NCBI RefSeq assembly: GCF_004010195.1
Contig: NC_057744.1
Span: 23,755,401-23,819,400 of the forward strand
Direction of reading: 5' to 3'
From: Chiloscyllium plagiosum
Lineage: Eukaryota
Length of the DNA: 64,000 bases
Below, piece by piece: positions 7,393 to 55,655 of the stretch (its first letter is position 1; each line of letters begins with the position of its first letter). The notes under the pieces are model-generated. The model did no database searches, was not told where the DNA came from, and was given only the letters and a program-made list of their open reading frames with translations. The translations under genes were made by a program, and so were the position numbers.

Positions 7393-7730
7393 CGTACATC
7401 TGTATCCTTGTCCTCTTCTCTCCAATGGAGGGTAGACATTTGGTAGCTTCACCATGCAGGTATAATTGTACTGAGAATGATCAAAAGAAACATTTTCAAT
7501 CTCCAGTGATGTGAAACAGCGTCTGAAACTACCTAGATTAACATCACGAACACAGGTCAGCTTCTTAATGTGGGAGTTCTTATTTCCCAGTAGTGACTCC
7601 CCCTGGAAATTAGCATGGATCCATTCATGATTAGTTCCATTATAAATCCATGTACAGTTTATTGTGACTGATTCTCCTGTCAAGACACTGAGCAGGCGCG
7701 GCTGAGTCACCTCTCCAATGAATGGTTCAC
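7393..7730 (-). pseudogene. Gene A V-set Ig exon (paralog of the gene B V exon), probably disabled
   Basis: Acceptor attccatcag| in phase 1. Encodes EVTQP..VTINC..W..LTC..C..LEIENVS..NYTC..VYPPL..GQG. Donor |gtaaag is in phase 0, so the exon is 338 nt versus 348 nt in the paralog. Confidence 0.8.
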
Positions 7731-8308: not shown

Positions 8309-8357
8309 CTCGAACTGCTGTTTGCAAAATGAAAAGCAGTTTCAGCAGCTGCTGCAT
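8309..8357 (-). CDS. Gene A leader exon (MQQLLKLLFILQTAVRG)
   Basis: ATG at 8357, hydrophobic signal-like peptide, phase-1 donor G|GTAAGA matching the V-exon acceptor phase. Confidence 0.8.
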
Positions 8358-18627: not shown

Positions 18628-18921
18628 GACTCCCTGATACTTCCAGTGTGGACGGTGCTTTGGTTACTGGATGTAGATCTAACTGACCTGCTCTGTCTGG
18701 GGGTGTACTCTGAGAATATCTACTTTACTTGGACCTGTGTTGGAGCAAAAATCAACAAAAACATATCTGCTCACCCTTTACTGTCAATTGCAACTCCATT
18801 GCCAGCAGCAAACTTGAGATCATCCCTTAAGTAATCCATCATAGCACTGTCTGTAGGTGTCTGAAAAAATGTGTGACTTTCAAACAACCAGTAAGAGATG
18901 AGACCAAATGAGATGTTGTAC
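18628..18921 (+). pseudogene. Decayed C1-set Ig pseudo-exon
   Basis: Strong acceptor tttttccctttctttcag|. LLCL-GVYSENIYFTW and SSKLEIIP*VIHHSTVCRC...VV|gtcagt align, across frameshifts and stops, to the gene B C1 exon. Confidence 0.65.
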
Positions 18922-20538: not shown

Positions 20539-21034
20539 NNNNNNNNNNNNNNNNNNNNNNNNNNNNNNNNNNNNNNNNNNNNNNNNNNNNNNNNNNNNNN
20601 NNNNNNNNNNNNNNNNNNNNNNNNNNNNNNNNNNNNNNNNNNNNNNNNNNNNNNNNNNNNNNNNNNNNNNNNNNNNNNNNNNNNNNNNNNNNNNNNNNNN
20701 NNNNNNNNNNNNNNNNNNNNNNNNNNNNNNNNNNNNNNNNNNNNNNNNNNNNNNNNNNNNNNNNNNNNNNNNNNNNNNNNNNNNNNNNNNNNNNNNNNNN
20801 NNNNNNNNNNNNNNNNNNNNNNNNNNNNNNNNNNNNNNNNNNNNNNNNNNNNNNNNNNNNNNNNNNNNNNNNNNNNNNNNNNNNNNNNNNNNNNNNNNNN
20901 NNNNNNNNNNNNNNNNNNNNNNNNNNNNNNNNNNNNNNNNNNNNNNNNNNNNNNNNNNNNNNNNNNNNNNNNNNNNNNNNNNNNNNNNNNNNNNNNNNNN
21001 NNNNNNNNNNNNNNNNNNNNNNNNNNNNNNNNNN
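20539..21034. other. Assembly gap (496 N)
   Basis: Run of n. Confidence 1.
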
Positions 21035-37939: not shown

Positions 37940-37997
37940 ATGGCGAATATGTTACCGCAGCTGATCGTTCTCTCTCTGGCATGGACTGGTTTGGAAG
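37940..37997 (+). CDS. Gene B exon 1: signal peptide MANMLPQLIVLSLAWTGLEG
   Basis: ATG at 37940, hydrophobic core, phase-1 donor G|GTTAGT. Confidence 0.75.
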
Positions 37998-40749
37998 GTT
38001 AGTAAGTCCTCTATTCCAATCTCTGTCACACAGCTCAAATTTAAATTGATCACAAATATTACTGATGCTGAATAAAAACTAAGATTACTGCTGGATCATG
38101 TAAAACAATACAAATATAATAGTTATATCATTGACATTTCCACATATGTTCTAAAGATGTTCACATTTATATAGAATGAATGAATGGAAATTTTGAACAA
38201 TAAATTGCATAATTATCTGACATTTATAAGTTGAATACTTTGCAGGAAATGTCCTGTGAATTGAAGTTGAGAGGGAGGTTCTGACACTAAAATCCATAGT
38301 GTCTAAAAGTAATGTGATTTGTCGCTGTATGGAATCCTTAAGAGTACAAACGGATGTCAGTTTATAACATAACTCTAACATCATGTTACAACAATTACTT
38401 AATTAGTCAACTTAGATTATATACAATAAAAATTACAAGCTACTAATAAAACTCAACTTTGTAGGAGCGGGCTGGTTGATTACAGCCTGTACTCTGACTA
38501 TAATGAACAAATATGACTATATTCTTCTTGGATTTGTAACTTGAAAACAAACTGTCTACTCTTAGGTGTGATTCTGCAATTAGGCAGCACTTACTGAGTA
38601 CACTGATAACTGCATAAAAAAACAATCTAAGATTATCAGTAGAGATTTTAACATGCCTTGTTTACACTCATTAGAATTGTCATCCATTCATACACAGTCT
38701 TCTCTTCTTTGCAAACATAGGAACTCTATAAATCATACTCTGTGAAATTCACTTCAAAATTTAGGCCACAATATTAACTTAGAAGCATATTGCAAATTGG
38801 GGCAATGTGTCTTATAAAAACAGAAATGTAAAACGATTAATAATCTAAAGCAAAGAACTACAGGTGCTGGAGATTGGAAATAAAACAGAAATTACCGGAG
38901 AAACTAAGCAGGTCTGGCAGCATTTGTGGAGAGAAAGTAGAGTAAAAATTTCAAGTCTGGCGATTCAATGGATTTAAAACTTTAACTATATTTATTTTCC
39001 ACTGGTGCTGCCAGACCTGCTGACCTCCAGCAATTTCTGCTTTTGAATATAGAAAGATGTATGGAGAGAAGTAGGCTATTCCATGCATGCTGTAAAAGAG
39101 CTTCCAGCCTAACCAACATTCAGTTCCTTGTCCATAGATATATAGGCTATGATACTTCAAGGCTCGATATCTTTTTTCTTTCTCCTGAATTTGTATGCCT
39201 TTACAATCTCGTCAGGCAGTGAGTTCCTGACTCCCTTCACTGAGTGGCTGAAAAAACAAAGTCACTTCAGTTTCTTTCTATTGCTTCTATCAAGCTATGG
39301 CCCCTGGTTGTTGATAGCTCTGCAAATGGAAATAGGCCATTTCTAACAATTCTATCTAGATCCCTCATAATGCTATACAAATAAGTTATATCCCCATTCA
39401 GCTTCCTCATTTTAAAGAAAGAAACCTTGATATCACATGTAAAATCCATATACAGGCTTGATACATTTAATGATGACTGCAGATCGTCAAATATTTTGCA
39501 GGCTGAGTTAGCTATATTCTTGATTGGCAATGAAGTAAAAGGATATAGGAGGTAGCAGAAAACTAGATTTAAAGCTACATTCATCAGGCATGAAGTTATG
39601 AAATAGTGGAGAGAGTTCGAAGGGCCAATTTTCATTTTGTTTTACATGCATAAGACATGTGTCCATACATGATTGCACATGAAAGTGGTGGTGGAAAGTT
39701 GTCTTCATGAAACATTGCTATCTTGCAATGTAAGTATGCCCTCGGTTTTCTATTTTTGCCCTTCTACACAGTAGATGTTGGGTGTTTGGGATGTGCTGTG
39801 GAAGGGACCACAGTGATTGTGCACTTACAGATTATATGCAAAGCTGTTCATTGTGCTTTAGTGGTGGAGGAAATGACGGCTGAACTATGGATGAGGCACC
39901 AATCAGTGTCTTGGTTGGCAGTGAGTTTCTTGAGTCTTACTGAAGATATACCCATCCAAGCAACTGAAGAGTATTGCATCAAACTCCTGATTTGCGTTCT
40001 GTAGATTATAGACACTGTGGAGACAGGGGCGAGTTATTTGTCACTGAATTTCTAGTCTCTAATCTGCTGTTGATATAGTATTTATTGGGCTGTTCTAGCT
40101 CAGTTTCTAGTCAATGATAATACTCAGGTCGTTGATAGTCGGTGAATCCAATTATATCAATGTCAAGTGGAGAGGGTCAGAACTTTTCTTCACAGAGATG
40201 GTCATTTCATGCACTTATGCAATGTAAATAGTATTTGCCACTTATAAGATCAAGCCTGAATGTTGCCCAGGTCTTGTTATGGACGTATGCTGTTCCAATG
40301 TCTGAGGAGTCATGAATAGTGCTAAACATTGTGCAATCATTAGTGACTCTCCATTTCTACTCCTATAAAGAAAGGATGGTCATTCATGAAGCACACAAAG
40401 ATGGTTAGGCCTAGGATTTTATCCTGAGGAGCTCTTGAAATCTTGATACTGTGATGATTGATGCCCAAGCACAAAGCCATAAATTCCATTTTCTGTGTCT
40501 GGAGCTGTCAGCTGTAGAGTTCGTTAGCTGAATAGTTTAACAATGTGACATTTAATCATATGATGTTCCATTGTTGGTGACATTTGATACTGCCCAAAAA
40601 TAAGGCAGAATGTCTGGGGAGTGTTTCGATAGGTCACTCAAGATAGTTCAAGTGTCAGTGAGCTGCATTTCAAGGTCAGTCCATTTTTGGATTTAGCTGT
40701 CAGAGAAGAGATCAGTGGGCTGAAAATGGCTTCACAAGGATCCAGTGAT

Positions 40750-40954
40750 TGGAATGATGTCAGCCAAGTGGACCTCATAGAATATAAGTTATCTGATTGG
40801 GGCTGTTAACCTGGTCTAATCAGGGAGTCCTGGCTGACAGATAAAAAACAAGAGTGTCAGGGTTTCTGCACACTTCAGGAGCCAACTCAGCGCTAGCTGG
40901 GTCAGTGTCATTTACTACGCATGTGTAAATATAGGCTGACTTGGAGATATTTCA
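40750..40954 (+). mobile_element. Probable solo LTR remnant
   Basis: TG...CA ends, internal inverted gtcagcca / tggctgac and ctgatt / aatcag, TATA-like gataaaaa. Resembles LTR-like repeats recalled from shark genomes. Confidence 0.4.
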
Positions 40955-41519
40955 AGGGGCAAAATAGAGTTGAAGAAACCCAGGTACACTGCTGCCATGA
41001 TCAGCTGACTTTTAACTTTGAATCAGACCATTGTAAGTTTGAATCTGGTTGCCTGGCAACTACTTGAAGGCCAAAGAAGTCGCAATTTTGCTTCCAGACT
41101 AAATATGAGGGTTCTTCAGAGAGCATGAAGCTAGACCTACAAATATGAAGATTTGAGATCTCTTGTGAAGATGATGAAGTTCTAGTGAGATTTGGTGATC
41201 CATAGTGTCACAAACAATGAGGTGGGTTGCTGAGAATTCAGTGAGAACTATCTTGCCCCCATTAGTTATTTGATAAGTTCAGTGAGATATTCAATTCACA
41301 GTTTATCTGGTGACCAATGTTTACCTCATGTTAATTCTCCATTGTAAGTTACGTGTAAACAACAAGTAGTTTTACTTTTCTAAATGTACAATAGCATTTA
41401 TTTTATTTATATAAAATGGTGGAATCTTGTGTCTTTATTGGCTTAAATACAGGCATCATTGCTCCCTAACTAAATCATAATCAATTTTGATGACTGACAC
41501 CCAGTCAGTAGGGCCTAGG

Positions 41520-42400
41520 TCTAAACATGAACAAAACAGCTGAATTCCAAAGGTGAGGTGAGTAACTGCCCTCGACATCAGGGCCACATTTGATAGAGTG
41601 TGGCATCAAGAAGATCTAGCAAACCTAGAGTCATTGGGATTCAGTGGACTAATCTCCATTAGTTAGAGTTGTATCTGGTACACAGGAAGTGGCTGTGGGT
41701 TGTTGGGTTCAAAATTGGCAAGTAACATTCACACCACACAAATACTAGGTAATGACCATGTTCAACAAAACTGAATCTATCCATCATCCCTTGACATTCA
41801 ATGGAATTACCATCACCAAAACACTCATTATTCACATCCTGGGAGTTAGAATTGACCAGAAACTGAATTGGACTGGACTAGCCATAAATACAATGACTAA
41901 AATAAGAGGTCAAAGACTAGGAAGCCTGTAGTGAGGAAGTCATTTTCTGACTCTCCAGAATCTGTCCACCATCAACAAGTCAGAGTGAGTTCAGCTCCAA
42001 CATCACTCAAGGAGCTTGACACCATCGAAGACAAAACGGCCCACTTGATTGGTACCTCATTCACAATAACCACTACTTCACCACTGACACTCATATAACA
42101 ATATGCACCATCTACAGGATGCACTGCAGGAATTCACGAGCACCTTACAAACCACAATCACTTCCAATCAGAGGGATAATGGCAGCAGATACAAGGGACC
42201 ACCATCACCTGTAAGATCCGCTCACCAACCTGATTTGGAAATGTATTTCTCCTTCAATGTTTCTGGTTCAAAATCCTGGATCTCCCTCCTGAACGGTCTA
42301 CCTGCGGTTCAAGAAGGCAACTCACCATCACCTTCCCAAGGACAACAAGGAATGGGCAATAAATGCTGGCCCAGCCAGAAACACCCGTATTTCATGTATG
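41520..42400 (+). mobile_element. Degenerate L2/CR1-group LINE fragment
   Basis: ALDIRATFDRVWH and WQVTFTPHK-type remnants, with a shared 3' end (gggcaataaatgctggcccagcc). Confidence 0.6.
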
Positions 42401-42466
42401 AGCTTTCTAAAATTGGTAATCTCATCTGGGAATGTAGCATAAATTTGGTGGTCTTGTCCACTATAT

Positions 42467-42763
42467 TAGATTACTTACAGTAATCTTCGGCCCAACATGT
42501 CCACACCGACCTGCAACCCACCCAGATGCATTCCCCTACAATTACCCCTTAACCTAACACTACGGGCAATTTAGCGTGGTCAATTCACCTAACCTGCATA
42601 TTTTTGGACTGTGGGAGGAAACCGGACCACCCGGAGGAAACCCACACAGACACGGGGAGAATGTGCAGATTCCACACAGTCAAGTCGCTTGAGGCGGGAA
42701 TTGAACCCGGGTCTGCTGGCGCTGTGAGGCAGCAGTGCTAACCACTGTGCCACCGTGCCGCCC
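42467..42763 (-). mobile_element. HE1-type SINE
   Basis: Head gggcggcacggtggcacagtggttagcactgctgcc on the - strand. Confidence 0.85.
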
Positions 42764-43639
42764 ATATTGATATCAATGTAATGCTTCCTTTCTAGTCATA
42801 ACAACCATCTTCCTTTGTTCTAGGTGTATTTCCAGTCACTGAAGGATTATTTACCCTGGTTCCAATTATTCCAATTTTGATTGGGCTTTTTAATGCCATA
42901 CTCAGTTAAAGCATCCCTGTATCAAGGGCAGCCACCCTGCCCTCACCTCCGAGGTTCAATTCTTTCGTTCATGTTTAGACCAAGGTTGTAATGGGGTTAG
43001 AGGCCAAATGATCTCGATGGGACGCAAAGTGTGCAGTAGTCAGCAGGCTATTGTGAAGTAATTGCCACTAGATAGCACTATCCATTTGGTTTCTGAACTA
43101 AATATGTTGGTTGAAACTGAAACCAACATGGTCATTCTAAAAGATGAGAGACTTAACAAAAAATCCAGGTCTTTTTCAATATATCATTTCAGTGGCATCA
43201 CACCACAATCACCTGATGGAGCAGCGCTCTGAAAGCTCGTGCTTCCAAATAAACCTGTTGGACTATAAGCTGGTACTGTGTGATTTTTAACATGATACTT
43301 TCCAACACTTCTTTTCACAGGGCAAGAATGTCCAGCAAGACTAAACATTATAATTTTCTTAAATAGGGGAACAGATACCTTAACATTGATCTTATAATGC
43401 CACATTGATTAGCACCAATGTATACCATAAAAAAATGTTGACAATAAAATGCAGCCACCCCCACAGTGAAAATGTCATGGGAAAGAGGAATCCACAGCAG
43501 GCATTTACACATGTTGCCCACTGCTCTCCTTCTGTCAGCACCTGACATTTATTTCTTTATTCCTTTATTCTTCTGTTTTATTCCTGTGATTTCGTATTTT
43601 TCTAATTTATTCCTAAGAATCTGTATTTAAGTGTCTGTA

Positions 43640-44490
43640 CTAGGCTAAATAGGTTGGGGATATTTTTCCTGGACCATTGGATATTGAGGGGTGACCTTAT
43701 AGAGGTTTAGAAAACTATAAGGGCATGGATAGGGTGAATAACCAAGGTCTTTTCCCTGGAGTGAGGGAGTCCAGAACTAGAGGGCATCGGTTTAATGTGA
43801 GAAGGGAAAGATTTACGAAGGACATGAAGGGCAACTTTTTCAGACAGAGGCAGGTGCCTGTGTGGAATGAGCTGCCAAAGGAAGTGGTGGAGGCTGGTAA
43901 AATTACAACATTTAAAAGGCATTTTAAAGATAGATGAATAGGAAGGGCTTGGAGGGATAGGGGCCAAATGCTGGCAAATGGGACTAGATTAATTTAATAT
44001 ATCTGGTCGACCTGGATGATTTGGACAGGTCATTTTCCATGCTGCACAGCTCTATGACTGGATGAGAAGAGAGACTGAACAATTTAGGCATATGAATTTA
44101 CAAGAATAAGAGGAGATCTATTTGACATATGAAAGATGCTAAAGATGTATCGCAAAGTAGATGCAGCAAGGATGTTTCCTTGTGGAGAACTTTAAAATGA
44201 GAGCTCACAGTTTTAGGATAAGGGGTAGCTGATTTAACACAGAAATGAAGGCAAAGTACTTCTCTCAATGGGTCGTGAATCTGTGGAATTTACTATTCCA
44301 GTTTGCGGTGGTTGTTGGGACATTGAGTAAATTTAAGCAGGAGATTGACAGATATGTAATTAGCAATGGGTTGAAGGGTTGTGGAGAGTGTGCAGGAAAG
44401 TAAAAGCGAAGATGAGATCAGCGGTGATCATATTAGATGGAGCAGAGGCTCAAACTCTTGAATTGCTCATTCCTGCTCCAAGTTCTTCCA
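43640..44490 (+). mobile_element. Two CR1 3' fragments
   Basis: SRTRGHRF..GNFFRQR..WNELPKEVVEA motifs and 3' UTRs. Confidence 0.8.
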
Positions 44491-45521
44491 ATTCTTGAGT
44501 TTCAATTAAAATAAACTTTGCACCTGGCTGGAGTTATACTGCATTTCAGGTAAACTTCAAAAGGACTATAATTACTGACTGCATCTGAATCATTTCTTTT
44601 TTTAATTTGTTGGGGAATTAGATTTTTGACCCAAACCAAAATTTTCACTTTAAGTAACACCCTCATACCACTTCTCTTTTGACATAATAGTGATAATGTA
44701 ACTGTGTGAATTGGTTTAGCTCAGCTGACAGAGCAGTGCGATTCCAACAGTGTGGATTCAGTTCCCATCACTGGTTTGAGGTTACCATGAAGGACTGTCC
44801 TACTCAACCTCTTCCCTTGCCTGAGTTCTGGTGGTCCTCAGGGTGAATCACTACAAGTTGCCTCTCCCTAATGAGAGTGCAGCCACTATGGCGACACAAC
44901 AAAATGTAACTGTGTATCAACACTGAAACAGGAGTAGGCCATTCAGTCTTTCAAAATTTTATGTCATTATACTCAATCATAGCTGAACCTCAATCTACTT
45001 CACTTATTTGCATTTTCTCCTCATAATTTGATATCTTTATTTAACCAAAGTCAATAGATAGGGATCAACAATACCTCAATCCATCATCAGTGTTCACATT
45101 TAAACAAACTCTTGCAACATCATAATTTATTAATTAACATCAAAGCAATTTACTATTGCAGATATTGGATGAAAAATGTTGCAACATACAATGTAAACCT
45201 TTAAAAGGTTTACAGGACTCAGTTTAAAGAAAATGTGGAGTTAAATCACTCAGCTAATGCAGAATCAGTAAGGTAATTTTGGTCTTGAAATTCCAAAAGA
45301 TTGGCTGCTTTAATTATGCATAAACTGCAGAGAATCAATGTAAATATTTGAGAAAATCTATTTATGTTCCTTAACTTTGGAATTCCACCAGTGTCCAATC
45401 ACCATTAAAGCAGGAGATTTAGACAATGCTTGGAATTTTATTGAAATTGTGGTCATAATGTATCCAACACTCAAATATAATTAATTACATAATAAAGTTT
45501 ATATCTTATGAACTAATTGTT

Positions 45522-45729
45522 ATGATTTGGAGATGCCGGTGTTGGACTGGGGTGTACAAAGTTAAAAATCACACAACACCAGGTTATAGTCCAACAGGTT
45601 TAATTGGAAGCACAGTAGCTTTCGGAGCAACGCTCCTTCATCAGGTGATTGTGACAAAATCACACTATCCGAAAGCTAGTGTGCTTCCAATTAAACCTGT
45701 TGGACTATAACCTGGTGTTGTGTGATTTT
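45522..45729. mobile_element. Palindromic Penelope-derived insert in gene B intron 1, with an intact antisense hammerhead core at 45616-45644
   Basis: Inverted arms. gaactaattgtt (45510-45521) and gaattaattgtt (45730-45741) flank the insert. Confidence 0.8.
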
Positions 45730-46999
45730 GAATTAATTGTTGTTCTTGTGAAATAAGCCACTATTTTGAAATCACACTGTGTGACTTTGGTCATTTTTTT
45801 AGCATTCCAATTCTGAGAAAATAATTATTTGAAGCTCCCTGGCTATTTTATGTATGTATGTATATTATTTATTTAATTAAATTGCTAATTTCTCATAAAT
45901 TTTATACGATCATAGCTGTCATTGCATTTAATATTGTTAGATATGAACTCAAGTGTCTTTTGTTAACTTTTTATCATTTTACTATCTCAATCTTGCAGTG
46001 GTCAGTTTCTTAGAATCTTTTAAAGAAATATAGTGTAGAGTGATGCGTTGAGTCTTAATGGTCACTAAAATGCTAATGCATGCACTCAGTTGAGTCAAAC
46101 TGTGACATAAAAATGGCACTGTGGGTGTATTTATACTCCATTGATTGCAGACATTCAAAAAGGCAGCAATTTGCCTTTGAGAGTAATGCTTTCCTTTTAC
46201 GTGATGTTCAAATGTTTTTAAATCAACGTTTTAAATGTCAGTTTCTCAGGCTTGTAGATTTCAGTGTGAGGTGTTTGATTCGTCAGTGGATTGACTATTA
46301 AGACAGATTATTTGGATACATTGCATATGGAACTTATTCAGTCTGGAGGTACTTTATGCATTCTGGGTTACCTCATGTGCAGGAATTGCTGCCTGTTGTT
46401 TGAGCTCATGTTACAATCAGCACGTGACAAATGACTAGAGCCACTGCAGTGCAATTGAAAATCAAAGACTGAGTACTGACTGATGTGGTCACCTCCGAAG
46501 GCAATGTGAGGTAACAACATTAGAGAATAGGAAAGGCACAGGTAGTGTCGAAGTTCCCCAAATCAGTAAACTTGAAAACTAGATTATACTTTTGGATAAG
46601 GAGATTTTGTCAGAACTTCTTGAAGAAGTGCAGCAATAATCAAAACTGGCAGATAGAAAACTGCTGAAACACCAGAAAGATTTGAAATGCAACAGTCATA
46701 GGTGAGTCAATAGTTAGGGGCAAAGCAACTGCATGCGTGAGTCCCAAATACTGTCTGTCTTGTGTCAGGCAAATAGTAAATGCTGTAACTTCCTTCATTA
46801 TGGAATCACTTCCTTTCTTGTAGCAAAATGATGAACATGTTCAGCGTGCATTGGTTGGACTGAAAGGCCTGTTTCCATGCTCTGTGAATATATGACTCGA
46901 CATGAATTATAAATGTAGATTAACAGATATTAAATATTACCCATGATTTGTCTGACTGAGTCTAATATTACTAACAATTGATATATTTTGTTCCATTAG

Positions 47000-47347
47000 G
47001 TAATCCAGTGATCAGGGAGGTGTCTCAGCCGGCTCTGGTCAGCATCCTGAGAGGAAAGCCAGCCACATTAAACTGTACATTTAATTATATTGCAAATGAC
47101 AGTAATTGGATCTATGTATCCTGGTACAAGACCTCACATGGGATGACTGAGAGATACAATTCAGAGAATAATCTGACCTGCATCCCTGACATTGCTCCAG
47201 GTATTTTTCACCACTGTGCTGCAACTCTGAAGATCGAAAACGTTTCTTTTAGAATGTCTGATTCGAATTATACATGTGTAGTGAAGGTACCAACTATCTA
47301 CCCACCAATCGAGGAAAAAGGACCAGGAACACAATTGCATGTTGTTG
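47000..47347 (+). CDS. Gene B exon 2: V-set Ig domain with J-like G strand (NKp30/CD28/NFAM1-like VJ type)
   Basis: ttccattag| ... |gtaaag, phase 1-1, 348 nt. VSQP..ATLNC..VSWYK..C-x11-C..LKIENVS..NYTC..IYPPI..GPGTQLHV. Confidence 0.92.
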
Positions 47348-49087
47348 GTAAAGTGTATATTCATTTATAAATATGTCCACATATGAAATAACTATTTTTA
47401 TAAAGTATCAAAAATTTAAAGTTAATGGAATATCATGTCCTTTGATTTCATTAATGAATTGCTGCAAGCATGAGCTGGATTTTGACTTTTAGTATCCCAG
47501 TCTTGAGGCCAAGCTGAGGTTGTGACCTTTCGCCATGACAGGGCAGGCACGTCCTTATAATTCTTGGCCAGACATTGTGCATTCTGCCAAATTGAAGCTG
47601 GTGGGATTGGCCGGTGAAGCTGGAAGGTCAACAAGATGACCTCCAGCAATCCACCTTTGAAGGTAAAGGAGAGAGACTGTGCCTCCATCATGAGATGTTT
47701 TCTTTGCACTTTTGAATCTTAACAAGCCCTGACTGTTAGGCCACCACTGTGGAAGGAGGAGCTCTAAATAGGGTGACCCGTAGCCACAGTTGTGACTAAG
47801 TAGACAGGGAGGGCCTCCAGCCTATTGCACTAGCCACCATGCCTACTATCTGGAAATCACCTTCAGGGAGTTGGCTTGCTCTGGAAATTCCATTAGGCCA
47901 CGGAAAATTGGCTTCAATTGACTTTCCATTCTCTTGAGTTAGCCTTGAGTCATTTGTGGCCTGATGGTAGGATGATATCGGCATGTAATGGTACTGAATT
48001 ATGCAGCCACCCACTGTCTCCATACTTGCTACCCCAATGGGGCGGAAATTCAGTCATGTGTAAGTGCAGTTACATGCAAGATAATTACTTAATTATGTCT
48101 GATGCAAGATTGAATCAACTAATTGAGAATTCTCACTGGGAGACTGCAAAATGTGTTTTTGGATATATATGCAATCACTTAGAAATTGACATCATTAACT
48201 GCAATAGCTCTAATTAGGCTTCTTATTTCAATATTCATATGTTGGCATACTATAATTCAACATTTCCCATTCTAATTTTTATCATCTCAATCTTTTTTAA
48301 TATTTCAAATTAACTTAAGATCTTGTCAAGAAATCCATTTTTTAGATCATTCATTCCTTGAATATGCAGTATCTTATATAAAAATTTTTCCATAAATCCC
48401 ACACAATTTCTGGATACCTATTGGTCTCTTAAAACAACAATGTAATTATGAAGCATCATGTCAATATAAAGAGGATGTTTACAGCAGACATGTTACAATA
48501 AGTGATCCATGGCATAGGAAGAGCTGAGTTCCACTTTGGAATGCAACTGAAACGTTTGGGCTTAAAGATGTGCAAGTCCAAAGATGTGCAAGTTAGGCAG
48601 ATTGGCTATGATAAGTTGCCCATAGTGTTCACGGATGTGCAGACTAGGTGGGTTAGCCATGGGAAATGCAGGGGTATAAGGATAGGGGGATAGGTCTGGA
48701 TGGGATGATGTTTAGTATGGACCTGTTGGGATGAATGGCCTGTTTTCACACTCGATAGATTCTATGGTGATTCTGAAATTCCCATTGAAAACAAAATGAG
48801 GCTTCATGCAAACCAGTACATTTTTGACAAAATCTTAAGCATGAATAACTGAAAGACAATTTGCTTCACTCATAGAAAAGAACTTTTATGTGACTGACAC
48901 TCAATGGATTAGTCAATCTCCCAAACTGAGATAAAAATTATAAGCTCTGCATAACCTCTGCATGATTAATTTATTGAAATGAAGTTGCCAAGTGCATTGC
49001 ATGTGTAGAACCTGCTTGACATTGACTTGTTATTGTCTTCTTTAGTATTTATATTCAGCATGACTTATTTTGCATTTTATGTTACAG

Positions 49088-49426
49088 TTCCACCATCTCC
49101 TCCAGCAATTTCTGTTACTCAGGAAACATTAGTAGCAGAGAAGGTATCTTCACTGTACTGCCTTGCTGGGGGATTTTATCCTCAGTCTATCTCCATTAAA
49201 TGGTTGCAAGCAATCCTAGACAATTCTCAATCTTCACCAGCAGATGCTGAAACAAGATACAGGACTCAAGAGTTCACCTTCAGCAACATGGATGGAACAT
49301 TTAACACTACTAGTCAATTGACATTTGTTCCCACTTCACAAGACCATGGATTAATCTATACTTGTCAGGTCCATCATTCAACTAGTGAAAAGCAAATAAT
49401 AAAGCAGATAAGGCTAAAGGTGAATT
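49088..49426 (+). CDS. Gene B exon 3: C1-set Ig domain
   Basis: gttacag| ... |gtaagt, phase 1-1, 339 nt. CLAGGFYPQSISIKW, NMDGTFNTTSQL and YTCQVHH (Ig/MHC signature YxCxVxH). Confidence 0.92.
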
Positions 49427-50645
49427 GTAAGTATATTACCTTAATGTGTTTTTCTGATGGGCGTAACTGTGGCATACACCTAATGTAAGCCTGAAGGGGA
49501 CTAGATGCCAAATATTTCACTGAAGCTTTACAAGACGATTATGCAATTTTAGCCTAGAGTGTACATATGATGACAGGCTGAGTTGGAATGTCCAAGATAA
49601 CGTTGTCCTTTCAACTCTGCTATATGGGTCCAAAATCCAACTCAGATGATTGAGATGAAGACATTCTGGTTGTAATCACCATAAAGAGTACAAGAATCTC
49701 AATGAACCTGGTCCTGCAGGAGGAGTGTTTTTTATTGAACTTATCATTTCATAGTGTAGAAAGAATTCAACTTTGAATCTGAATGTGGTTGGATTTGGGA
49801 AATGCCATGTGATAATTGGAATTGCAATGCCCTTGAAGTAAACTAACTTGAACAACACTGGTAGGTAGGAACACTGGAACTTCAGCTGTGATATAAGAGT
49901 AAATTGAAAAGTTCCTCTGAAGAACTTGCACAGTTCTGGTGGGCGAAATATGTGCCTTACAATTTGATAATATTTTTAAATTTGTTCATAGAAGTGATAA
50001 GTTGGATCTGTGCTTACTCCTCCCTGAAAAGAATGGTTTCAAACCAATGGATCCATGTCTAAACTGAGGAAAATAATGATAAAAAGAGAAACCAGGAGAC
50101 ATTTCTTTCACATACTCAAAAACTTAGATTAAGGGAAATTTTGAGATGATGAGGTTTATCTTCATAAAATGGTTTTAGGGCCTTTCCCTATTCACAAAAC
50201 ATCTTGACAAAGACAGACTAATTTTCTGGGAGAGAATGATGGAATACAGTTTTACACTTAAAGCTTTGCATACTTTTTATCACAACTACATACCTGGGGA
50301 GCAATGACTATGATTCTTGTGGTGGTACAAGAGGAAAGGAAGCAGAAATTCGATAGCAAGTTAACGCTTTTCTCTCTCTCAGTACTGATTTGAATGTAAT
50401 CTTGTGAGTAGTTGTCTGTTTGTCTTTTGCTTAGGAATTAATGTGAATAAGATTCCATTTAACAACCCATTCTTCCATAAGTGCTTTGTTTTTAAAGAGT
50501 TATGTGGCCTGGCAAATTACAATACAGAAAAGATTAATTTGAATGCTTTTAATTCCAGTCAGTTTTATTTATTCTCTGACATATTCTCTGAGGTTGAGTC
50601 TGCTTCTATGACTAATTATTTCTCATTTCCTTTGTTCTGATTCAG

Positions 50646-50963
50646 ATGGTCCAAAACTTGTCATATATTACAGGACTTCTGACACAGATATGTTCCATCG
50701 ACTGGACCAAGAACACATCCATGTTAAGCATCAGACATTTCTCGAACTAAACTGTACAGCGGACAGTAACCCAGTAGCCACAGTGATATGGAAAAAGATA
50801 TCCCAGGAACAAAGCTTGCAATTGGCTGCTGGAGTAAACATTTCAATACTGAAGATAGCAAGTATTGAATATTCAGACAGTGGAGCATATCTTTGTGGAG
50901 CACAAAATGATTATGGCTTTCAAGAATTTCCTGTAAATATATACCTAAAATCTGATTTGGGAA
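50646..50963 (+). CDS. Gene B exon 4: C2/I-set Ig domain
   Basis: gattcag| ... |gtaagt, phase 1-1, 318 nt. YGP..LNCTADSNPVATVIWKK..LKI..DSGAYLCGAQNDYG. Confidence 0.9.
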
Positions 50964-51121
50964 GTAAGTGCAAAAGCAAATGCTCCTCTCTTTATGAATG
51001 CTCGGTTCAGAACAAACTGAGAAATGAGTAATTAATTATAAATGGAATTCATTTTTTCCAAGGCCTATTCATTTGCCAAACTGGGATAATGTGTTCCTAT
51101 AGAATATGGCCTATAGATAAA

Positions 51122-51310
51122 ATAGTTAGAGACAGAATAACTGCAGATGCTGGAATCCAAGGTAGATAAGCAGGAGGTTGGAAGAACACAGCAAGCCAGG
51201 CAGCGTAAGGAGGTAGACAAATAGATTCCGGAGTTACACCCGAAATGTCGACTTCTCCACCTCCTGGTGCTGCCTGGCTTTCTGTATTCTTCAGCTTCCC
51301 ATTTGTCTAT
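51122..51310. mobile_element. Palindromic Penelope-derived insert with 11-bp TSD
   Basis: CTATAGATAAA occurs at 51111-51121 and 51311-51321, with inverted arms inside. Confidence 0.7.
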
Positions 51311-51699
51311 CTATAGATAAACTATGCCAGTGATCAATATGGTCATAAGCAATAAAAAATAGAATCTCAAAGACATTAGGTAAATGCATGAATTCTTCAA
51401 TGTTTAATCTTTAGTTCTTCAACATGACAAAAATATATATGGATTTGTCTTCCATTCTTAGAGATTACTAGAAATTTCATTTTCCTTCACTTGAACCATC
51501 TAACTCTAACGAGATTGCGAAATATTAATATGTACGTGACCAGGCACTCATCCAAAAAGTCTGTATTCCACAGAGAAGTTAACCACAAAGAGGAACACCA
51601 CTTTAGGTCTTAGTTTGGAAGTTTACTTGTGGAAGCTGAAGGAAGCCCAGGCCAATTGGAAACCAGGCAAATGACATTTAACTTCAGCAGAAAGTGGAG

Positions 51700-52070
51700 T
51701 AGTAGGGGAGAAGAACAGACAGAGAATGGGGCAAAGGAGGTTTAGAAGGGGGAGAGGAAGAGAAGGAAGAGGAGAGAGAAAGAGTGAGGAGAGAGGAGGA
51801 TGGAAGAGGAGGGATGGGGAGGAGAAGAGGAAGAAAAGGGAAAGTACAGGAGACAGGAAGAGAAATGGGGTGGGAGAGAAGTCTGGGGAGCAAAGGTGTT
51901 TGGAGAATATGGAATGTGGGTGGGAGAGGGAAGCGGAAGGGGATGAAGAAGGTGGAGGGAGGAAGATAGGAGGAAATGAGGGGGAGAGGAGAGAGGGAGG
52001 GAAGGGTACAGGAAGGAAGAGGGACATGGAGGGGTGAGGGTTGGGATGGAGTGAAAGGTGCTGATGAAGG
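51700..52070 (+). repeat. Polypurine (GA-rich) low-complexity tract
   Basis: About 370 bp, overwhelmingly G/A. Confidence 0.85.
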
Positions 52071-52547
52071 GGTGATCTCCTTTGGGGGTATCTTGTGCTT
52101 ACCTGAGGCACGTCTCAAAAGCCCTTTAACCTCCCGTTCCCAGTTCACTAAGACATGTAAACCTGGTAAAAACTTACTAGACACTCTGGTCCCAGTGTTG
52201 TGTGCTCCCCACTGGAACTGCCCGCAATCCCTAAGGTGGCCACTGCCAAGCCTGACGCTGCATGTCTGCTGAGCTCACATCCCTACAAAAAGCATGTCCT
52301 CCCTAAACAGGAGCAGAAATCTAATCTGAAGTGAATCAATGTTCCTCCCAGTGTTAAATGGTGCAGGGCAGCTAGTATGTCTGTTGATGGGCTTGCCCAC
52401 AACTGTTTAGTCAGGACAGGAGGTGAGACCTGTTAGACTCATCATTTCCTGTGTTGTTAGAATCAGGTCCTGATGAAAGTTCCTGACCTGAAATATCGAC
52501 GCTGCTTGACCTGCTGTACTTTCTCCAGCTCCACACTTTATTGACTT

Positions 52548-52835
52548 TGGTGGCACAGTGGTTAGCACTGCTGCCTCACAGCGCCAGAGACCCAGGTTCA
52601 ATTCCCGCCTCAGGCGACTGTGTGGAGTTTGCACATTCTCCCAGTGTCTGCATGGGTTTCCTCCGGTTTCCTCCCACAGTCCAAAGATGTGCAGGCCAGG
52701 TGAATTGGCCATGCTAAATTGCCCATAGTGTTAGGTGAAGGGGTAAATGTAGGGGTAGGATGGGTTGCGCTTCAGCGGGTCGGTGTGGATTTATTGGGCC
52801 GAAGGGCCTGTTTCCACATTAAGTAATCTAATCTA
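52548..52835 (+). mobile_element. HE1-type SINE
   Basis: Head ggtggcacagtggttagcactgctgcc, taatctaatct tail. Confidence 0.85.
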
Positions 52836-53576
52836 ACCAGGCCAAGCAGTGACCATGACACAGGGATGGCTTTTTAATGTACCTGACCAGCTTGGTATGG
52901 GGCAGTCCTCTGAAGTAACCCATTGTCACCCCTCTTCCCCCATGCCCTCTCCAGATCCCTGTCTCTCTCTTCCTCATATCCCTTCCAAGAGCCCCATGAA
53001 ATCCAGCCCTGCACATTTTATGGCATCAATTCTCTGTAAGCTGCTTGTGTTGATATCTGATATATCAGTATAATTAATCTCTGCCAATCGCAACGCATCT
53101 TCTTCCACACTCCTTAAGAGCCCCAGCCTTCTTTGTGTCCTCTAAAACAGAAGTTAAATACAAGTTAACATAGAAATGTCAAAATACTGGCAAAATAAGG
53201 GCAACAGCTTATCTTGATACCCAGACCGCACACTGGAAACATTTGAAAACCACTCAAGCACAGATGTGTTAGAAACTTTTCCATCTATTCGAGGTTAGAA
53301 TAGAATCAGATTGCTATTGAGGTTTTTGAGGCTGCCTGAAGCCATGTCATAAAAACTGAACTGAGGCATCATACAAACAACCGAGGGAACAAATTTATTT
53401 GTCATTGTGAGCTATGAAAATTAAAACAAAAATGTTTATTTGTTTGAAACTTCACTTTGTATTTTGTACCTTTTATTCCAGTAAACCTGGAATTTAATTT
53501 AATTCATAGTGATCACCAATCATTAATGCTAAAGTGGATTGGATGAAACTCAAACTGCTTTTCTTTTCCTTCACAG

Positions 53577-53660
53577 GTAGTTTTCCTGTGCGATCTGTAA
53601 CATTCCTAGTCTTTCTGGTCTCTGTCATTTCGTTACTGATCTGGGGCAGTGAATGGAAAG
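53577..53660 (+). CDS. Gene B exon 5: transmembrane exon (SSFPVRSVTFLVFLVSVISLLIWGSEWK)
   Basis: Strong acceptor ttttcttttccttcacag|, 84 nt, phase 1-1, donor G|GTAAAT. Hydrophobic segment with an Arg near its N-terminal end. Confidence 0.85.
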
Positions 53661-54489
53661 GTAAATTTATCAATTGTTGACATCAAGCACAAATGTGAGC
53701 TGACAGTTATAAAAGATACCGACTCATTTACAAAATAAAAAACAACTGTGGATGGTGGAAATCTAAAACAAAAACTGAAACTGCTGGAGAAACTCAGCAG
53801 GTCTGGCAGCAATTGTAGAGAGAAAGCAGAATTAACCTTTCGGGTTCAGTGACCCTGAGTTCTGGAAAAGGGTCACGAGACATGAAATGTTAATTCTGCT
53901 TTCTCTTCACAGACACTGCAAGAACCTGCTGGGTTTCTCCAGCAATTTCTGTTTTTGTGTTGACCCATTCACCAGTTGATATGATGCGATTTATTTTACT
54001 AGGAGACTTCCCCTTTGTTATAGGTGCTCAGTGGCTGAGGGGCAGAATATCAGGTAGGAGATACACACTGACGGTCACTTCCTAGGCCCTTGCTGTAGGC
54101 ACCCTCTGCTTTCATGTCTCTATGACCATCATTCTGTGGGTCTTGTCCCCACTTGTTTACATGTGGCCTGGGTCACTCTGTGATCCTGGAACTCTGAGGC
54201 TTATTCTTTTTTTGGGAACAGCCAAGGCCTTCCAAATGGTGCCACGAACAAAAGAACTGTGAGCCTCAGAGCTCAGTCAGGAATATTTCTACCCTCGGGA
54301 TCTAGACTCCAGGAGAAGGCCTGCAGATGGACGACCTGCACCACTTGATTGGCAAGTGGTTCAGTGGGTCTTCTCAAAAACAGAGGCCCTTACAAGTCTC
54401 TTGGTGGCTCTCTGGCTGACAGGTAGGAACTCCAATGCCGCAAAAAGATTCCATCCACTGTTCAAATACAAGCAAAGGAGCATGAAAGA

Positions 54490-55155
54490 CAGGTAACCAC
54501 GGCAGCTAACACAATGTTGGCTATTACTTCAAGAGAGTTGGAGTACAAGTTTAGGGAAATCTTTTATAAGGGGCTGGTGAGACCACATCTCGAGTTCTGT
54601 GAGGAGTATTATACTGCTTATTTAAGGTCCACATATTTAAAGAAATATATTATTTCATTGGAGGCAATTCAGTGAAGGTTCATGAGAATGATCCCTGTTA
54701 AGAAAAAATTGCCCTTTGAACAAAGATTAAATAGATTGGCACTCTATTCACTAGAATTTAGAAAAATGAGAGGTGAGCTCATTGAAACACACAGGATTCT
54801 TAACTGGCTTAACAGGGCAAATGATGAAAGGATGTTTCCCTCAGCGGGAAAGGCTAGAACCAGAGGGAAAAGTTTTGGAATATAGGGGTGCCAATTTAAG
54901 ACTGAAATGGGAAGGGATTTCTTGTCACAGAGGGTTGAGAGTCTTTGGAACTCCTTGCCATAGAGAACTGTGGAGGCAGAGTCTGTGTTTATATTTAAAG
55001 GTGAGATAGATTCTTGAATAGCCAAAGAATCAAGGGTTCTGGAGAAAGAATTGGAATATGTATGTGAAGAACTTCAGATCAGCCGTGATCCTATTGAATG
55101 GTGGAGCAGGCCTGAGGGGCCGATTGGCCTACTTCTGTTCCTTCTTATAGTCTTT
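54490..55155 (+). mobile_element. CR1 3' fragment
   Basis: RLNRLALYSLEFRKMRGELIETHRIL and a 3' UTR. Confidence 0.8.
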
Positions 55156-55346
55156 TATAGGAGCAGTCAAATACATCATGAAACAGATAAGAAATGCAGA
55201 TGAGAAAGAATTCAATGCAATAATAATCAAATAAAGCTGAAAGAAATCATTTTCTAGCAACAAAGCATATGCAGAGACTGGCAGGATGAAAAAATGCTCT
55301 AATTGCAGAGAATTCCTAATAATGTAAAATTCTTCTCATTTCACAG

Positions 55347-55371
55347 ATCGATACTGCCCTTGCAACTCTAG
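55347..55371 (+). CDS. Gene B exon 6: 25-nt cytoplasmic micro-exon (DRYCPCNS)
   Basis: ttcttctcatttcacag| ... AG|GTAAGC, phase 1-2, open in frame. Confidence 0.65.
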
Positions 55372-55564
55372 GTAAGCCACAACCTAAGCTCTTTAGTTCT
55401 TTAGTAGAAGCTTCTCTAGCATAACTGGTGAATCAACAACTGTTCAAGATAGTTTGCAGAGGGGGCAGAGGCACTATGCACACAGGAAACAAACCCTAAT
55501 CATTGCTATGTACAGGAAATTCTAAACCTCAGACAGGCACTAATTTTGTTTTGTACTCTCACAG

Positions 55565-55655
55565 TTATCAGAGTTCAACTGAACTGAAGTTTCCAAGAGT
55601 AAACAACAGGGCTCGACCCAGGAGGATGTTGCAATTATCAGGCTGGAAGCAATAA
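55565..55655 (+). CDS. Gene B putative terminal exon (SYQSSTELKFPRVNNRARPRRMLQLSGWKQ*)
   Basis: Branch-like cactaat plus a pyrimidine tract and acag|, compatible with phase 2. The TAA overlaps AATAAA at 55651-55656. Confidence 0.45.

What the first reader, a model, noticed from the sequence alone, without database searches (positions are those of the whole stretch)
37940..55655. Intact non-rearranging receptor with a germline-joined VJ domain, a true C1 domain, a C2/I domain and a TM
Seen: seven exons (58+348+339+318+84+25+91 = 1263 nt, 420 aa), all with GT-AG boundaries and matching phases. The V exon contains its own GPGT J-like strand and no RSS is evident. The second domain has C1 signatures (GFYP, NxDGTF, YTCQVHH). 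Known: C1 domains are largely confined to Ig/TCR/MHC/B2M/tapasin/SIRP/B7-type proteins, and germline VJ-C1 genes are discussed as relatives of the pre-RAG antigen receptor. Inference: a VJ(NKp30/CD28-like)-C1-C2 combination matches no mammalian gene I can name and may define an uncharacterised cartilaginous-fish leukocyte receptor family.
Basis: partly seen in the sequence, partly recalled or inferred. Interest (0 to 1): 0.85.

Follow-up and report, generated by a model that had tools for sequence, protein, structure and literature searches.

The report
Shark VJ-C1-I paired-receptor gene
This is a real, intact shark gene for a cell-surface receptor that joins an antibody-like variable domain to an antibody-like constant domain without any DNA rearrangement, and it belongs to an old, unnamed fish receptor family that databases mislabel as Siglecs.

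Summary
The gene is real. The last exon is wrong. The conserved terminal exon lies at 58028-58121, so the gene ends about 2.5 kb beyond the finding. Pfam calls the three big exons V-set, C1-set (50.8 bits, above C2-set_2 at 36.3) and I-set. No RSS lies within 300 nt of the V exon.

Exons 3 to 7 are 100% identical to the RefSeq model "siglec 10" of Chiloscyllium plagiosum, but Siglec features are not met. Relatives with V-C1-I-TM occur in sharks, rays, sturgeon, paddlefish, gar, arowana and coelacanth, under about a dozen different automatic names.

The family has two forms:
- 10 of 10 long-tail members carry an xYADI ITIM-like motif.
- 7 of 7 short-tail members, this gene included, carry an Arg at the outer edge of the membrane span.

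I read it as the activating partner of an ancient SIRP-like paired-receptor family.

RNA contigs show the C1-to-I splice in 3 of 4 runs. The V-to-C1 splice was not seen. No paper naming this family turned up in my searches.

The parts
37940..37997 (+). Exon 1: start codon and signal peptide (19 codons plus 1 nt). The 5' UTR is not mapped.
   Evidence: The ATG has G at -3 and +4, the peptide MANMLPQLIVLSLAWTGLE is hydrophobic, and the donor is G|GTTAGT. It is inferred. The only RNA hint is contig X1 record 1, which carries 105 letters 5' of 46998 that do not lie on the laid stretch.
47000..47347 (+). Exon 2: V-set domain with its own J-like G strand (GPGTQLHV), a YPP loop and an extra Cys pair.
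   Evidence: Pfam V-set, E 2.5e-6. AlphaFold model pLDDT 86.5; its fold matches Ig VL, TCR V alpha, SIRP alpha d1 and CTLA-4. C25, C60, C72, C92, G107 and G109 are invariant in 15 of 15 aligned family sequences. No RSS nearby.
49088..49426 (+). Exon 3: C1-set domain.
   Evidence: Pfam C1-set, 50.8 bits. The best single-domain PDB sequence matches are SIRP alpha/gamma d3 and the B7-H6 IgC domain, each about 40-42 bits. Model pLDDT 79.9. 100% identical to P0038. Its donor is used in RNA contigs.
50646..50963 (+). Exon 4: I-set domain.
   Evidence: Pfam I-set, E 4.7e-9. The acceptor at 50646 is joined to 49426 in runs X5, X8 and X1. Contig X1 record 3 leaves the stretch exactly at 50963 and runs on for 138 more letters.
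53577..53660 (+). Exon 5: stalk and membrane span, SFPVRSVTFLVFLVSVISLLIWGSEWK, with an Arg at the outer edge.
   Evidence: 100% identical to P0038. The Arg is kept in 7 of 7 short-tail family members.
55347..55371 (+). Exon 6: 25 nt, juxtamembrane (D)RYCPCNS.
   Evidence: Exact match to P0038; AG and GT borders.
58028..58121 (+). Exon 7 (revised): the end of the short cytoplasmic tail, ...VEDADVHEEITSKL, plus the stop codon.
   Evidence: Exact match to the P0038 tail. The tail is homologous in sawshark P0001, catshark P0045 and stingray P0044.
55565..55655 (+). Open and in phase, but unsupported.
   Evidence: tblastn with P0001 and P0038 gives no hit here. No relative has a similar tail.
7393..7730 (-). 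V exon of a second family member (long-tail type), probably disabled.
   Evidence: 78% identical to P0005 over a tblastn alignment that also takes in upstream sequence; 42% identical to exon 2. It is 338 nt where phase 1-to-1 needs 345; the missing letters lie in the G-x-G part.
18630..18920 (+). Remnant of a family second-domain exon.
   Evidence: 40% identical to P0002 residues 134-233, with 4 in-frame stops.

Best explanation
A seven-exon gene (37940-58121, + strand) encodes a type I membrane glycoprotein of about 421 residues. The order is signal peptide, VJ-type V domain, C1 domain, I-set domain, a membrane span with an Arg at its outer edge, and a 44-residue tail with no ITIM-like tyrosine motif.

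It is the short-tail, presumably activating, member of an ancient family of paired receptors. The long-tail members carry xYADI and SEYxxV-type inhibitory motifs.

Shown here: the exon structure, the domain types, the family, its two forms, and the C1-to-I splice.

Inferred:
- The V domain, through its conserved YPP-containing FG loop, binds a ligand that is also seen by the inhibitory paralogues.
- The Arg pairs with the acidic residue of an ITAM adaptor of the FcR gamma / CD3 zeta / DAP12 kind, so engagement activates the cell.

By organisation and by V-C1 sequence, the nearest named family is SIRP. Orthology to SIRP is not shown.
For: - Exons, phases and open frames.
- Domain types.
- Exons 3-6 and the revised exon 7 are 100% identical to RefSeq P0038.
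- The sawshark orthologue P0001 (408 aa) has V-C1-I-TM and the same tail. It is 62% identical in V and 63% in C1.
- A whole-library HMMER search with the V exon gave 35 hits at E up to 0.001. The top six are elasmobranch family members.
- The family is present in bony fish and coelacanth.
- Two forms: 7 of 7 short-tail members have the Arg and none has an ITIM-like motif. 10 of 10 long-tail members have xYADI and none has that Arg.
- In the C1 tree of 22 rows, the short-tail elasmobranch clade (98/97) is separate from the long-tail elasmobranch clade (100/97). In coelacanth the two forms are near-identical, and in sturgeon they group together.
- SIRP link: after family members, the next hits of P0001 in 5.8 billion proteins are SIRP alpha/beta (E 1.3e-10 and 9.7e-9). 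BLASTP gives 28% identity over 238 residues spanning V plus C1, with a shared GF(Y/F)PQNIS.KW motif.
- RNA: joint 49426 to 50646 in 3 of 4 runs from 2 studies.
Against: - No contig in 4 runs shows the V-to-C1 joint. The three contigs that carry the 3-4 joint run on from intron 2 into exon 3 (they start at 48717, 48894 and 48989). In the three runs of the window's species label the V exon is covered only by unspliced contigs; the X1 contig stops 20 nt short of the V donor.
- The RefSeq model of this species starts inside the V exon and uses an internal donor at 47200, which would remove the F and G strands.
- The kind of runs X5, X6 and X8 is not on record, and they cover introns too.
- The leader exon is 9 kb upstream and unverified.
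- The Arg lies at the edge of the membrane span, not mid-membrane. No adaptor, ligand or tissue was tested.
- A family profile searched against the PDB gives similar totals for chains matched across V plus C1: UrIg2 101 bits, SIRP alpha 84 bits, Ig light chains 70-79 bits. SIRP kinship is therefore not specific.
- By fold, the C1 model matches nectin/SYG D2 as well as it matches MHC II, UrIg2 and SIRP.
Confidence: 0.6

Rival explanations
1. It is a true Siglec (a sialic-acid-binding lectin), as RefSeq names it ('siglec 10') and names its relatives ('siglec 5/6/11/12/13', 'MAG-like', 'sialoadhesin-like').
For: Automatic names. The family profile aligns its domains 2-3 with MAG domains 2-3 (122.7 bits) and with Siglec-8 (87 bits). 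The exon 4 peptide hits MAG at E 1.5e-5. The tails of long-tail members resemble Siglec ITIM/ITSM-like pairs (recalled).
Against: - The V domain keeps the ordinary B-F cysteine pair (C25, C92, in Y-x-C) and a J-like G-x-G-T. Siglec V domains, as I recall, lack the F-strand Cys and carry the ligand Arg there.
- Domain 2 scores higher as C1-set than as any C2 model.
- No Siglec or MAG chain is among the best 60 PDB sequence hits of the V or the C1 exon.
- Pipelines give the same family eight or more unrelated names.
Confidence: 0.03
2. It is a nectin/PVR/CADM-type adhesion molecule. Those proteins have V, a C1-like second domain and an I/C2 third domain.
For: The domain order is the same. Foldseek hits of the C1 model include Rst and SYG-1 D2 (ranks 1-5), nectin-2, -3 and -4 D2, and CD155 D2, at E about 1e-6. 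Pipelines named some relatives 'cell adhesion molecule 2-like' or 'syg-2-like'.
Against: - No nectin, PVR or CADM chain is among the best 60 PDB sequence hits of any of the three exons.
- C1-set outscores C2-set_2 by 14 bits.
- The family splits into ITIM-bearing and Arg-TM forms, which is an immune paired-receptor trait.
- The V domain has a J-like G strand.
Confidence: 0.08
3. It is a direct relic of the pre-RAG antigen-receptor gene (the UrIg/UrIg2 or PRARP kind), closer to Ig/TCR than to SIRP.
For: It is VJ-C1 in one gene, with phase-1 V-to-C splicing as in Ig/TCR (recalled). The top full-sequence PDB hit of the C1 exon is UrIg2 (E 2.3e-14), although that score is summed over three domains of about 17-20 bits each. 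Ig VL and TCR V alpha fill most of the V fold hits shown. In the family profile search, UrIg2 has the highest total among chains matched across V plus C1.
Against: UrIg and UrIg2 have only C1 domains after the V domain, and UrIg2 forms Fc-like homodimers (PMC12227049, abstract and section 7). This family has one C1, then an I-set domain and signalling tails. Per-domain C1 scores favour SIRP d3 and B7-H6. No linkage data could be obtained.
Confidence: 0.12
4. The locus is decaying or is not used as modelled. Transcripts lack a complete V domain, through an internal promoter, a retained intron or the internal donor, so no VJ-C1 receptor is made in this species.
For: No V-to-C1 joint was seen. 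Intron 2 sequence is contiguous with exon 3 in three contigs. The RefSeq model has a truncated V. Two neighbouring family fragments in the window are disabled.
Against: - All seven exons are open with consensus splice sites.
- The V exon keeps every family-invariant residue. It is 62% identical to the sawshark V domain, much the same as the C1 domain (63%), so there is no sign of relaxed constraint.
- The predicted model P0012 of Hemiscyllium ocellatum reads across the canonical V-C1 joint.
- An RNA-like contig covers the V exon with 105 upstream letters from elsewhere.
Confidence: 0.12

Closest known systems
SIRP family (SIRP alpha/beta/gamma)
   Same: - A non-rearranging VJ-type V domain followed directly by a C1 domain.
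- Paired inhibitory (ITIM) and activating (basic residue in the membrane span, short tail) forms.
- SIRPs are the first hits outside the family for P0001, with 28% identity over V plus C1, and they share the motif GF(Y/F)PQNIS.KW.
- The xYADI and SEYxxV tail motifs of long-tail members recall the SIRP alpha motifs (recalled).
   Different: - The third domain is I-set, not C1.
- The V domain has an extra Cys pair and a YPP loop that are absent from the pig SIRP sequence P0046.
- The membrane residue is Arg at the outer edge, where SIRP beta has Lys (recalled).
- Passages of two papers put SIRPs only in tetrapods or amniotes and call their origin unknown (PMC13262535, PMC9652883).
- Orthology, synteny and CD47 binding were not tested.
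UrIg / UrIg2 (shark non-rearranging VJ-C1 genes)
   Same: The V domain is a single-exon VJ domain without an RSS, followed by C1. It occurs in elasmobranchs. The UrIg2 structure 9dmx is the top full-sequence PDB hit of the C1 exon.
   Different: UrIg2 has 9-11 C1 domains and forms Fc-like homodimers (PMC12227049, abstract and section 7). Here there is one C1, an I-set domain and ITIM or Arg-TM signalling forms. The per-domain similarity is only about 17-20 bits.
CD28/CTLA-4/PD-1 family
   Same: The V domain has a G-x-G bulge and a proline-rich FG loop (YPP, against MYPPPY, recalled). A PD-1 cluster ranks first by protein-language-model features, and CTLA-4 clusters share the most features of the rows shown. 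CTLA-4 is rank 20 by fold.
   Different: All nine described members have a single extracellular V domain (PMC11599192, abstract). This gene adds C1 and I-set domains. No sequence search linked them.
Siglecs / MAG
   Same: A V domain followed by Ig domains, ITIM/ITSM-like tails in long-tail members, and profile similarity of domains 2-3 to MAG. RefSeq also names them so.
   Different: The V domain has the ordinary disulfide pattern and a J-like strand. The second domain is C1-set.
NITR, hagfish APAR, PRARP (other VJ-type non-rearranging receptors)
   Same: A VJ-type V domain. NITR and APAR also have paired ITIM and charged-membrane forms. This is recalled, apart from the list in the PMC11599192 discussion passage.
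   Different: None has V-C1-I as far as I recall. None appeared among the 35 hits of the V-exon library search, judging by the 20 I looked up. PRARP papers were not in the library, so what I say of PRARP is recalled.

Membership tests
Siglec | V-set domain with the ligand-binding Arg on the F strand and the unusual B-E intrasheet disulfide, with no F-strand Cys (recalled definition). | tested here: not met
   The F strand reads NYTCVV, with the canonical Cys. C25 and C92 are invariant in 15 of 15 family sequences. There is no Ig_CD22-type Pfam hit for the V exon at E up to 1.
Siglec | All domains after the V domain are C2-set. | tested here: not met
   Domain 2 is C1-set at 50.8 bits, against C2-set_2 at 36.3 bits. 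All ranks shown among the 30 named Atlas hits are C1-set clusters.
Siglec | Binds sialic acid. | not testable with these tools
   It needs a glycan-binding assay.
SIRP | N-terminal VJ-type V domain followed by C1. | tested here: met
   The alignment with pig SIRP runs through the J-like GPGTRL, the domain border and the B-C strands of d2.
SIRP | Three-domain ectodomain V-C1-C1. | tested here: not met
   The third domain is I-set. Its PDB hits are DSCAM, titin, contactin and MAG.
SIRP | Paired inhibitory ITIM form and activating form with a basic membrane residue. | tested here: met
   10 of 10 long-tail members have xYADI. 7 of 7 short-tail members have Arg. Function is not tested.
SIRP | Orthology: conserved synteny and a monophyletic tree with tetrapod SIRPs. 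| tested here: inconclusive
The C1 tree had no other C1 families as controls. The PDB profile gives similar totals for SIRP alpha, UrIg2 and Ig light chains.
CD28 family | A single extracellular V domain (PMC11599192, abstract). | tested here: not met
   Three Ig domains.
Rearranging antigen receptors (Ig/TCR) | V exon ends in an RSS; J is a separate segment. | tested here: not met
   The J-like strand lies inside the V exon, which ends in a GT donor. No heptamer/nonamer pair lies in 46700-47700.
UrIg/UrIg2 | VJ followed by C1 domains only. | tested here: not met
   One C1, then I-set. Compare PMC12227049, section 7.
Nectin/PVR | V, a C1-like second domain (Pfam C2-set_2) and an I/C2 domain, with sequence kinship to nectins. 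| tested here: inconclusive
   The domain order fits, and the fold matches nectin D2. No nectin chain is among the best 60 sequence hits of any of the three exons.

The most novel reading that the evidence does not exclude
The family is a third surviving lineage of non-rearranging VJ-C1 genes from the first jawed vertebrates, beside UrIg/UrIg2 and PRARP, and it is the pre-tetrapod root of the SIRP family. Its V domain is nearest to CD28/CTLA-4/PD-1 by learned features. It could therefore tie the co-stimulatory-receptor V domains to C1-bearing, antigen-receptor-like chains, and show that paired ITIM and Arg-TM signalling was already attached to a VJ-C1 ectodomain before the split of cartilaginous and bony fish.
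Probability: 0.22. Interest if true: 0.8.

Novelty: new variant of a known kind. Interest (0 to 1): 0.6.

Why it matters
C1 domains are rare outside Ig, TCR, MHC and a few partners. Genes that join a VJ-type V domain to a C1 domain without rearrangement are the main material for reconstructing what the RAG transposon invaded.

Passages of two papers say that the origin of SIRPs is unknown (PMC9652883) and date the family to tetrapods (PMC13262535). A family with the SIRP-like V-C1 module and paired signalling forms, found from sharks to coelacanth, gives a concrete candidate for that origin.

It also gives shark and basal-fish immunology a new paired receptor to test. On the practical side, about a dozen inconsistent automatic names (siglec, MAG, SIRP, CADM2, ROBO3, syg-2, tapasin, NCR3 and others) hide one family.

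Tried and rejected
It is in phase, but no relative has such a tail.
- True Siglec is rejected on V-domain cysteines and the C1 call.
- UrIg membership is rejected on domain content.
- Germline joining of a rearranging gene is not supported: the family is old, and there is no RSS trace.
- The search with P0070 (V-C1 only) was meant to rank outside V-C1 families fairly. It returned family members only, 5 hits among 114 candidates, so it was uninformative.
- The full-length family profile against the PDB was swamped by multi-I-set proteins. I did not build a V-C1-only profile.
- The C1 tree had 22 rows. P0045 was dropped for having fewer than 60 residues. P0004, P0005, P0019, P0020, P0031, P0038, P0049, P0070 and P0075 were not included. 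It had no Ig, TCR, MHC or B7 rows, so it cannot test SIRP affinity.
- Literature: PRARP and the Dornburg and Yoder review were not in the library.
- No paper naming a shark or fish V-C1-I family turned up. Supplements are closed. The supplementary gene lists of PMC11599192 and PMC12227049 might contain such sequences, and I could not see them.
- Tissue of expression could not be read, because run records are coded.
- The joined seven-exon protein was never built, searched or folded.

Full report
**Observation.**
On the + strand I read every claimed exon and checked the borders by script.
- Exons 2 to 6 have AG acceptors and exons 1 to 6 have GT donors. Four of the six donors read GTAAG.
- The phases chain 0-1, 1-1, 1-1, 1-1, 1-1 and 1-2. 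There are no internal stops.
- Pfam scores the three large exons as V-set (E 2.5e-6), C1-set (E 2.2e-13, 50.8 bits, against 36.3 for CD80-like C2-set_2) and I-set (E 4.7e-9).
- A scan for heptamer/nonamer pairs found none within 300 nt of the V exon, and 8 in the whole window.
- The V exon carries its own G strand, GPGTQLHV, and ends in a splice donor. It is therefore a one-exon VJ domain.

**The 3' end is different.**
- A whole-library HMMER search with the V exon and cluster look-ups led to P0038. This is RefSeq XP_043532322.1, 'sialic acid-binding Ig-like lectin 10' of Chiloscyllium plagiosum.
- P0038 is 100% identical to exons 3, 4, 5 and 6. The window is therefore most likely from that species.
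- The tail of P0038 continues in an exon at 58028-58121 (NSKQCENQGKSCKVDPVEDADVHEEITSKL, then stop), not at 55565-55655.
- The same tail is recognisable in sawshark (P0001), cloudy catshark (P0045) and red stingray (P0044).
- The coding length is thus 1266 nt. I did not build the joined protein.

**RNA.**
One exon was used to find runs. Then 46800-51500 was laid on the contigs of four runs.
- The joint 49426 to 50646, with GT..AG ends, is present in 3 of 4 runs: X5, X8 and X1. These come from two studies and two organism labels.
- In X1, depth lies over exons 2 to 4, the 194 nt before exon 3 and the repeat stretches, so it looks like RNA. Its contig leaves the stretch exactly at the exon 4 donor and runs on for 138 letters.
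- Another X1 contig covers the V exon from 46998 and has 105 further letters at its 5' end. That would fit the 58-nt leader plus a UTR. The letters were not shown, so this is only a hint.
- Against my reading: no contig shows 47347 to 49088.
- Also against it: the three contigs with the 3-4 joint start inside intron 2.
- The V exon in X5, X6 and X8 is covered by unspliced contigs. The kind of those three runs is not on record.
- P0038 itself starts at an internal Met and uses an internal donor at 47200, which would delete the F and G strands.
- The predicted Hemiscyllium ocellatum model P0012 and the sawshark protein P0001 do read across the canonical V-C1 border.

**The family.**
- The V exon found 35 proteins at E up to 0.001 among 1.84 billion.
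- The top six, at 42-63% identity, are elasmobranch proteins of 243-494 residues.
- Pfam shows V, C1 (or a weaker C1/C2-set_2 call), then I-set in the full-length ones.
- Searches with natural full-length relatives added stingray and catshark orthologues.
- They also added members in gar, two sturgeons, eel, tarpon, arapaima and arowana.
- Look-ups added coelacanth and paddlefish.
- In the alignment of 15 sequences, C25, Y29, C60, C72, C92, V94, G107 and G109 of the window's V exon are invariant. The family signature is therefore the ordinary B-F disulfide, an extra Cys pair and G-x-G.
- Pipelines name the members siglec-5, -6, -10, -11, -12 and -13, MAG-like, sialoadhesin-like, SIRP-alpha-like, CADM2-like, ROBO3-like, syg-2-like, HMCN2, Schwann cell myelin protein-like, tapasin-like and NCR3. 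The family has no name of its own.

**Two forms.**
A script located the most hydrophobic 19-mer and the tail motifs in 20 members.
- Seven short-tail proteins have an Arg in or just before the span: the window's own product P0038, P0001, P0045, P0044, paddlefish P0039, sturgeon P0080 and coelacanth P0030. The local motif is of the kind FPVRSV, IPVRMV, FIARLL or FAVRAV. None has an ITIM-like motif.
- Ten long-tail proteins (108-164 residues of tail) all have xYADI. Most have further I/V/S-x-Y-x-x-V/I motifs, such as SEYSVV. None has that Arg.
- Three rows fit neither form. P0004 has a short tail with neither the Arg nor a motif. P0079 has a 38-residue tail with one VVYAEV. P0076 has an Asp in the span.
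- In the C1 tree (22 rows), the elasmobranch short-tail clade (window, Hemiscyllium, stingray, sawshark; 98/97) is separate from the elasmobranch long-tail clade (100/97). Both clades hold sharks and rays, so the split is old.
- In coelacanth the two forms are near-identical in C1. In sturgeon they group together. This is the usual picture for paired receptors.
- The elasmobranch long-tail forms have lost the GFYP and DGTF marks. The window's lineage and the bony-fish members keep them.

**What it resembles.**
- By sequence, the C1 exon's best single-domain PDB matches are SIRP alpha d3 (41.6 bits, residues 4-109), SIRP gamma d3 (40.3 bits) and B7-H6 IgC (41.5 bits). The higher-ranked UrIg2 and IgG entries sum several domains of 17-25 bits each.
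- For sawshark P0001, the first hits outside the family among 5.8 billion proteins are SIRP alpha of pig (E 1.3e-10) and SIRP beta of pangolin.
- BLASTP aligns 238 residues through V, the J-like GPGTRL, the domain border and GF(Y/F)PQNIS.KW of d2, at 28% identity.
- The V model (pLDDT 86.5) matches Ig VL, TCR V alpha, SIRP alpha d1 (rank 2 and six further ranks among those shown), CTLA-4 (rank 20) and VpreBJ, all at E about 1e-6.
- Learned features put the V exon nearest to PD-1, 'antigen receptor' and CTLA-4 clusters.
- The C1 model (pLDDT 79.9) matches Rst/SYG-1 and nectin D2, MHC II beta-2, UrIg2, IgNAR C1, B7-H6 and SIRP alpha about equally. Fold alone cannot separate C1 from C1-like.
- A profile of the whole family against the PDB gives comparable totals for the chains matched across V plus C1: UrIg2, SIRP alpha and Ig light chains. 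It also aligns domains 2-3 with MAG and Siglec-8. That probably explains the RefSeq names.
- I conclude that SIRP is the nearest named family in organisation and by the word-seeded search. Specific orthology is not shown.

**Literature.**
- UrIg and UrIg2 are the described shark non-rearranging VJ-C1 genes. UrIg2 has 9-11 C1 domains and Fc-like dimers (PMC12227049: abstract and section 7 read).
- PMC10751288 (passages read) lists NKp30, PRARP and UrIg as VJ genes of the MHC.
- The CD28 family paper extends that family to nine members, each with a single V domain, and lists CD79, NITR, SIRP, CD8, NKp30 and PRARP as joined-VJ genes (PMC11599192: abstract and one passage read).
- PMC9652883 (passages read) states that SIRPs are known from mammals, chicken and Anolis, and that their origin is unknown.
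- PMC13262535 (one table passage read) dates the SIRP and Siglec families to Tetrapoda.
- None of nine searches produced a paper on a V-C1-I family in fish. Supplements were closed and may hold relevant lists.

**Mechanism, marked by status.**
- Shown: the gene structure, domain types, family membership, the two-form pattern and one splice.
- Inferred from established knowledge of paired receptors: the short-tail form needs an ITAM adaptor that pairs with its Arg. An Arg near the outer leaflet is the arrangement I recall for FcR-gamma-coupled receptors such as Fc alpha RI, OSCAR and LILRA. The long-tail forms would recruit SHP-type phosphatases.
- Inferred: the FG loop VP.xYPPxExKGxGT is shared by both elasmobranch forms, which suggests a shared ligand.
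- Unknown: the ligand, the adaptor and the cell type.

**Verdict.**
This is a real gene with a slightly wrong 3' model. It is a member of an ancient, unnamed, SIRP-like paired-receptor family with a VJ-C1-I ectodomain. It is mislabelled in databases and is not limited to cartilaginous fish. The main gap is proof that the full V exon is spliced to C1 in this species.

Noticed in passing
window 7393-7730 (-) and 8304-8357 (-): Leader-like exon and V exon of a second family member of the long-tail type. tblastn with P0005 of C. punctatum gives 78% identity across the V exon and upstream sequence. The V exon is 338 nt where intact relatives need 345 to keep phase 1-to-1. The missing letters lie in the G-x-G-T part, so it is probably a pseudogene or an assembly slip.
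   Followed up: partly
window 18630-18920 (+): Remnant of a family second-domain exon, 40% identical to P0002, with 4 in-frame stops. It lies on the opposite strand to the V remnant.
   Followed up: partly
window 47143-47200 (+): The RefSeq model P0038 starts at an internal Met of the V exon and uses an internal donor, G|GT, at 47200/47201. That would remove the F and G strands. In run X1 (another organism label) position 47200 reads A.
   Followed up: partly
window 58028-58121 (+); P0001, P0044, P0045: The C-terminus of the short-tail orthologues ends in S/T-x-hydrophobic (SKL, TEF, SEL, SEF), like a class I PDZ ligand. A C-x-C lies next to the membrane in the window's tail (CPC) and the sawshark's (CNC). 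Function is unknown.
   Followed up: no
window 48894-49087 (+), intron 2: All three RNA-derived contigs that carry the exon 3-4 joint run on upstream into intron 2, as far as a high-copy repeat at 48527-48840. This could be a retained intron or a repeat-borne alternative start.
   Followed up: no
window 48527-48840 and 51039-51352: Very high-copy repeats in introns 2 and 4, with summed contig depth in the tens of thousands or more in X5, X6 and X8.
   Followed up: no
window 55-546, 2382-2738, 3542-3973 (+); 25771-26124 (-): ORFs that look like reverse transcriptase of LINE elements, judged by eye. Much of the window outside the gene is repeats. An N run lies at 20539-21034.
   Followed up: no
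P0030 and P0068 (Latimeria); P0077/P0078 and P0080 (Acipenser): The Arg-TM short-tail and ITIM long-tail forms have nearly identical ectodomains within coelacanth and within sturgeon. This is a sign of recent duplication or gene conversion between paired receptors.
   Followed up: partly
P0076 (Megalops atlanticus): A short-tail family member with an Asp, not an Arg, inside its membrane span.
   Followed up: no
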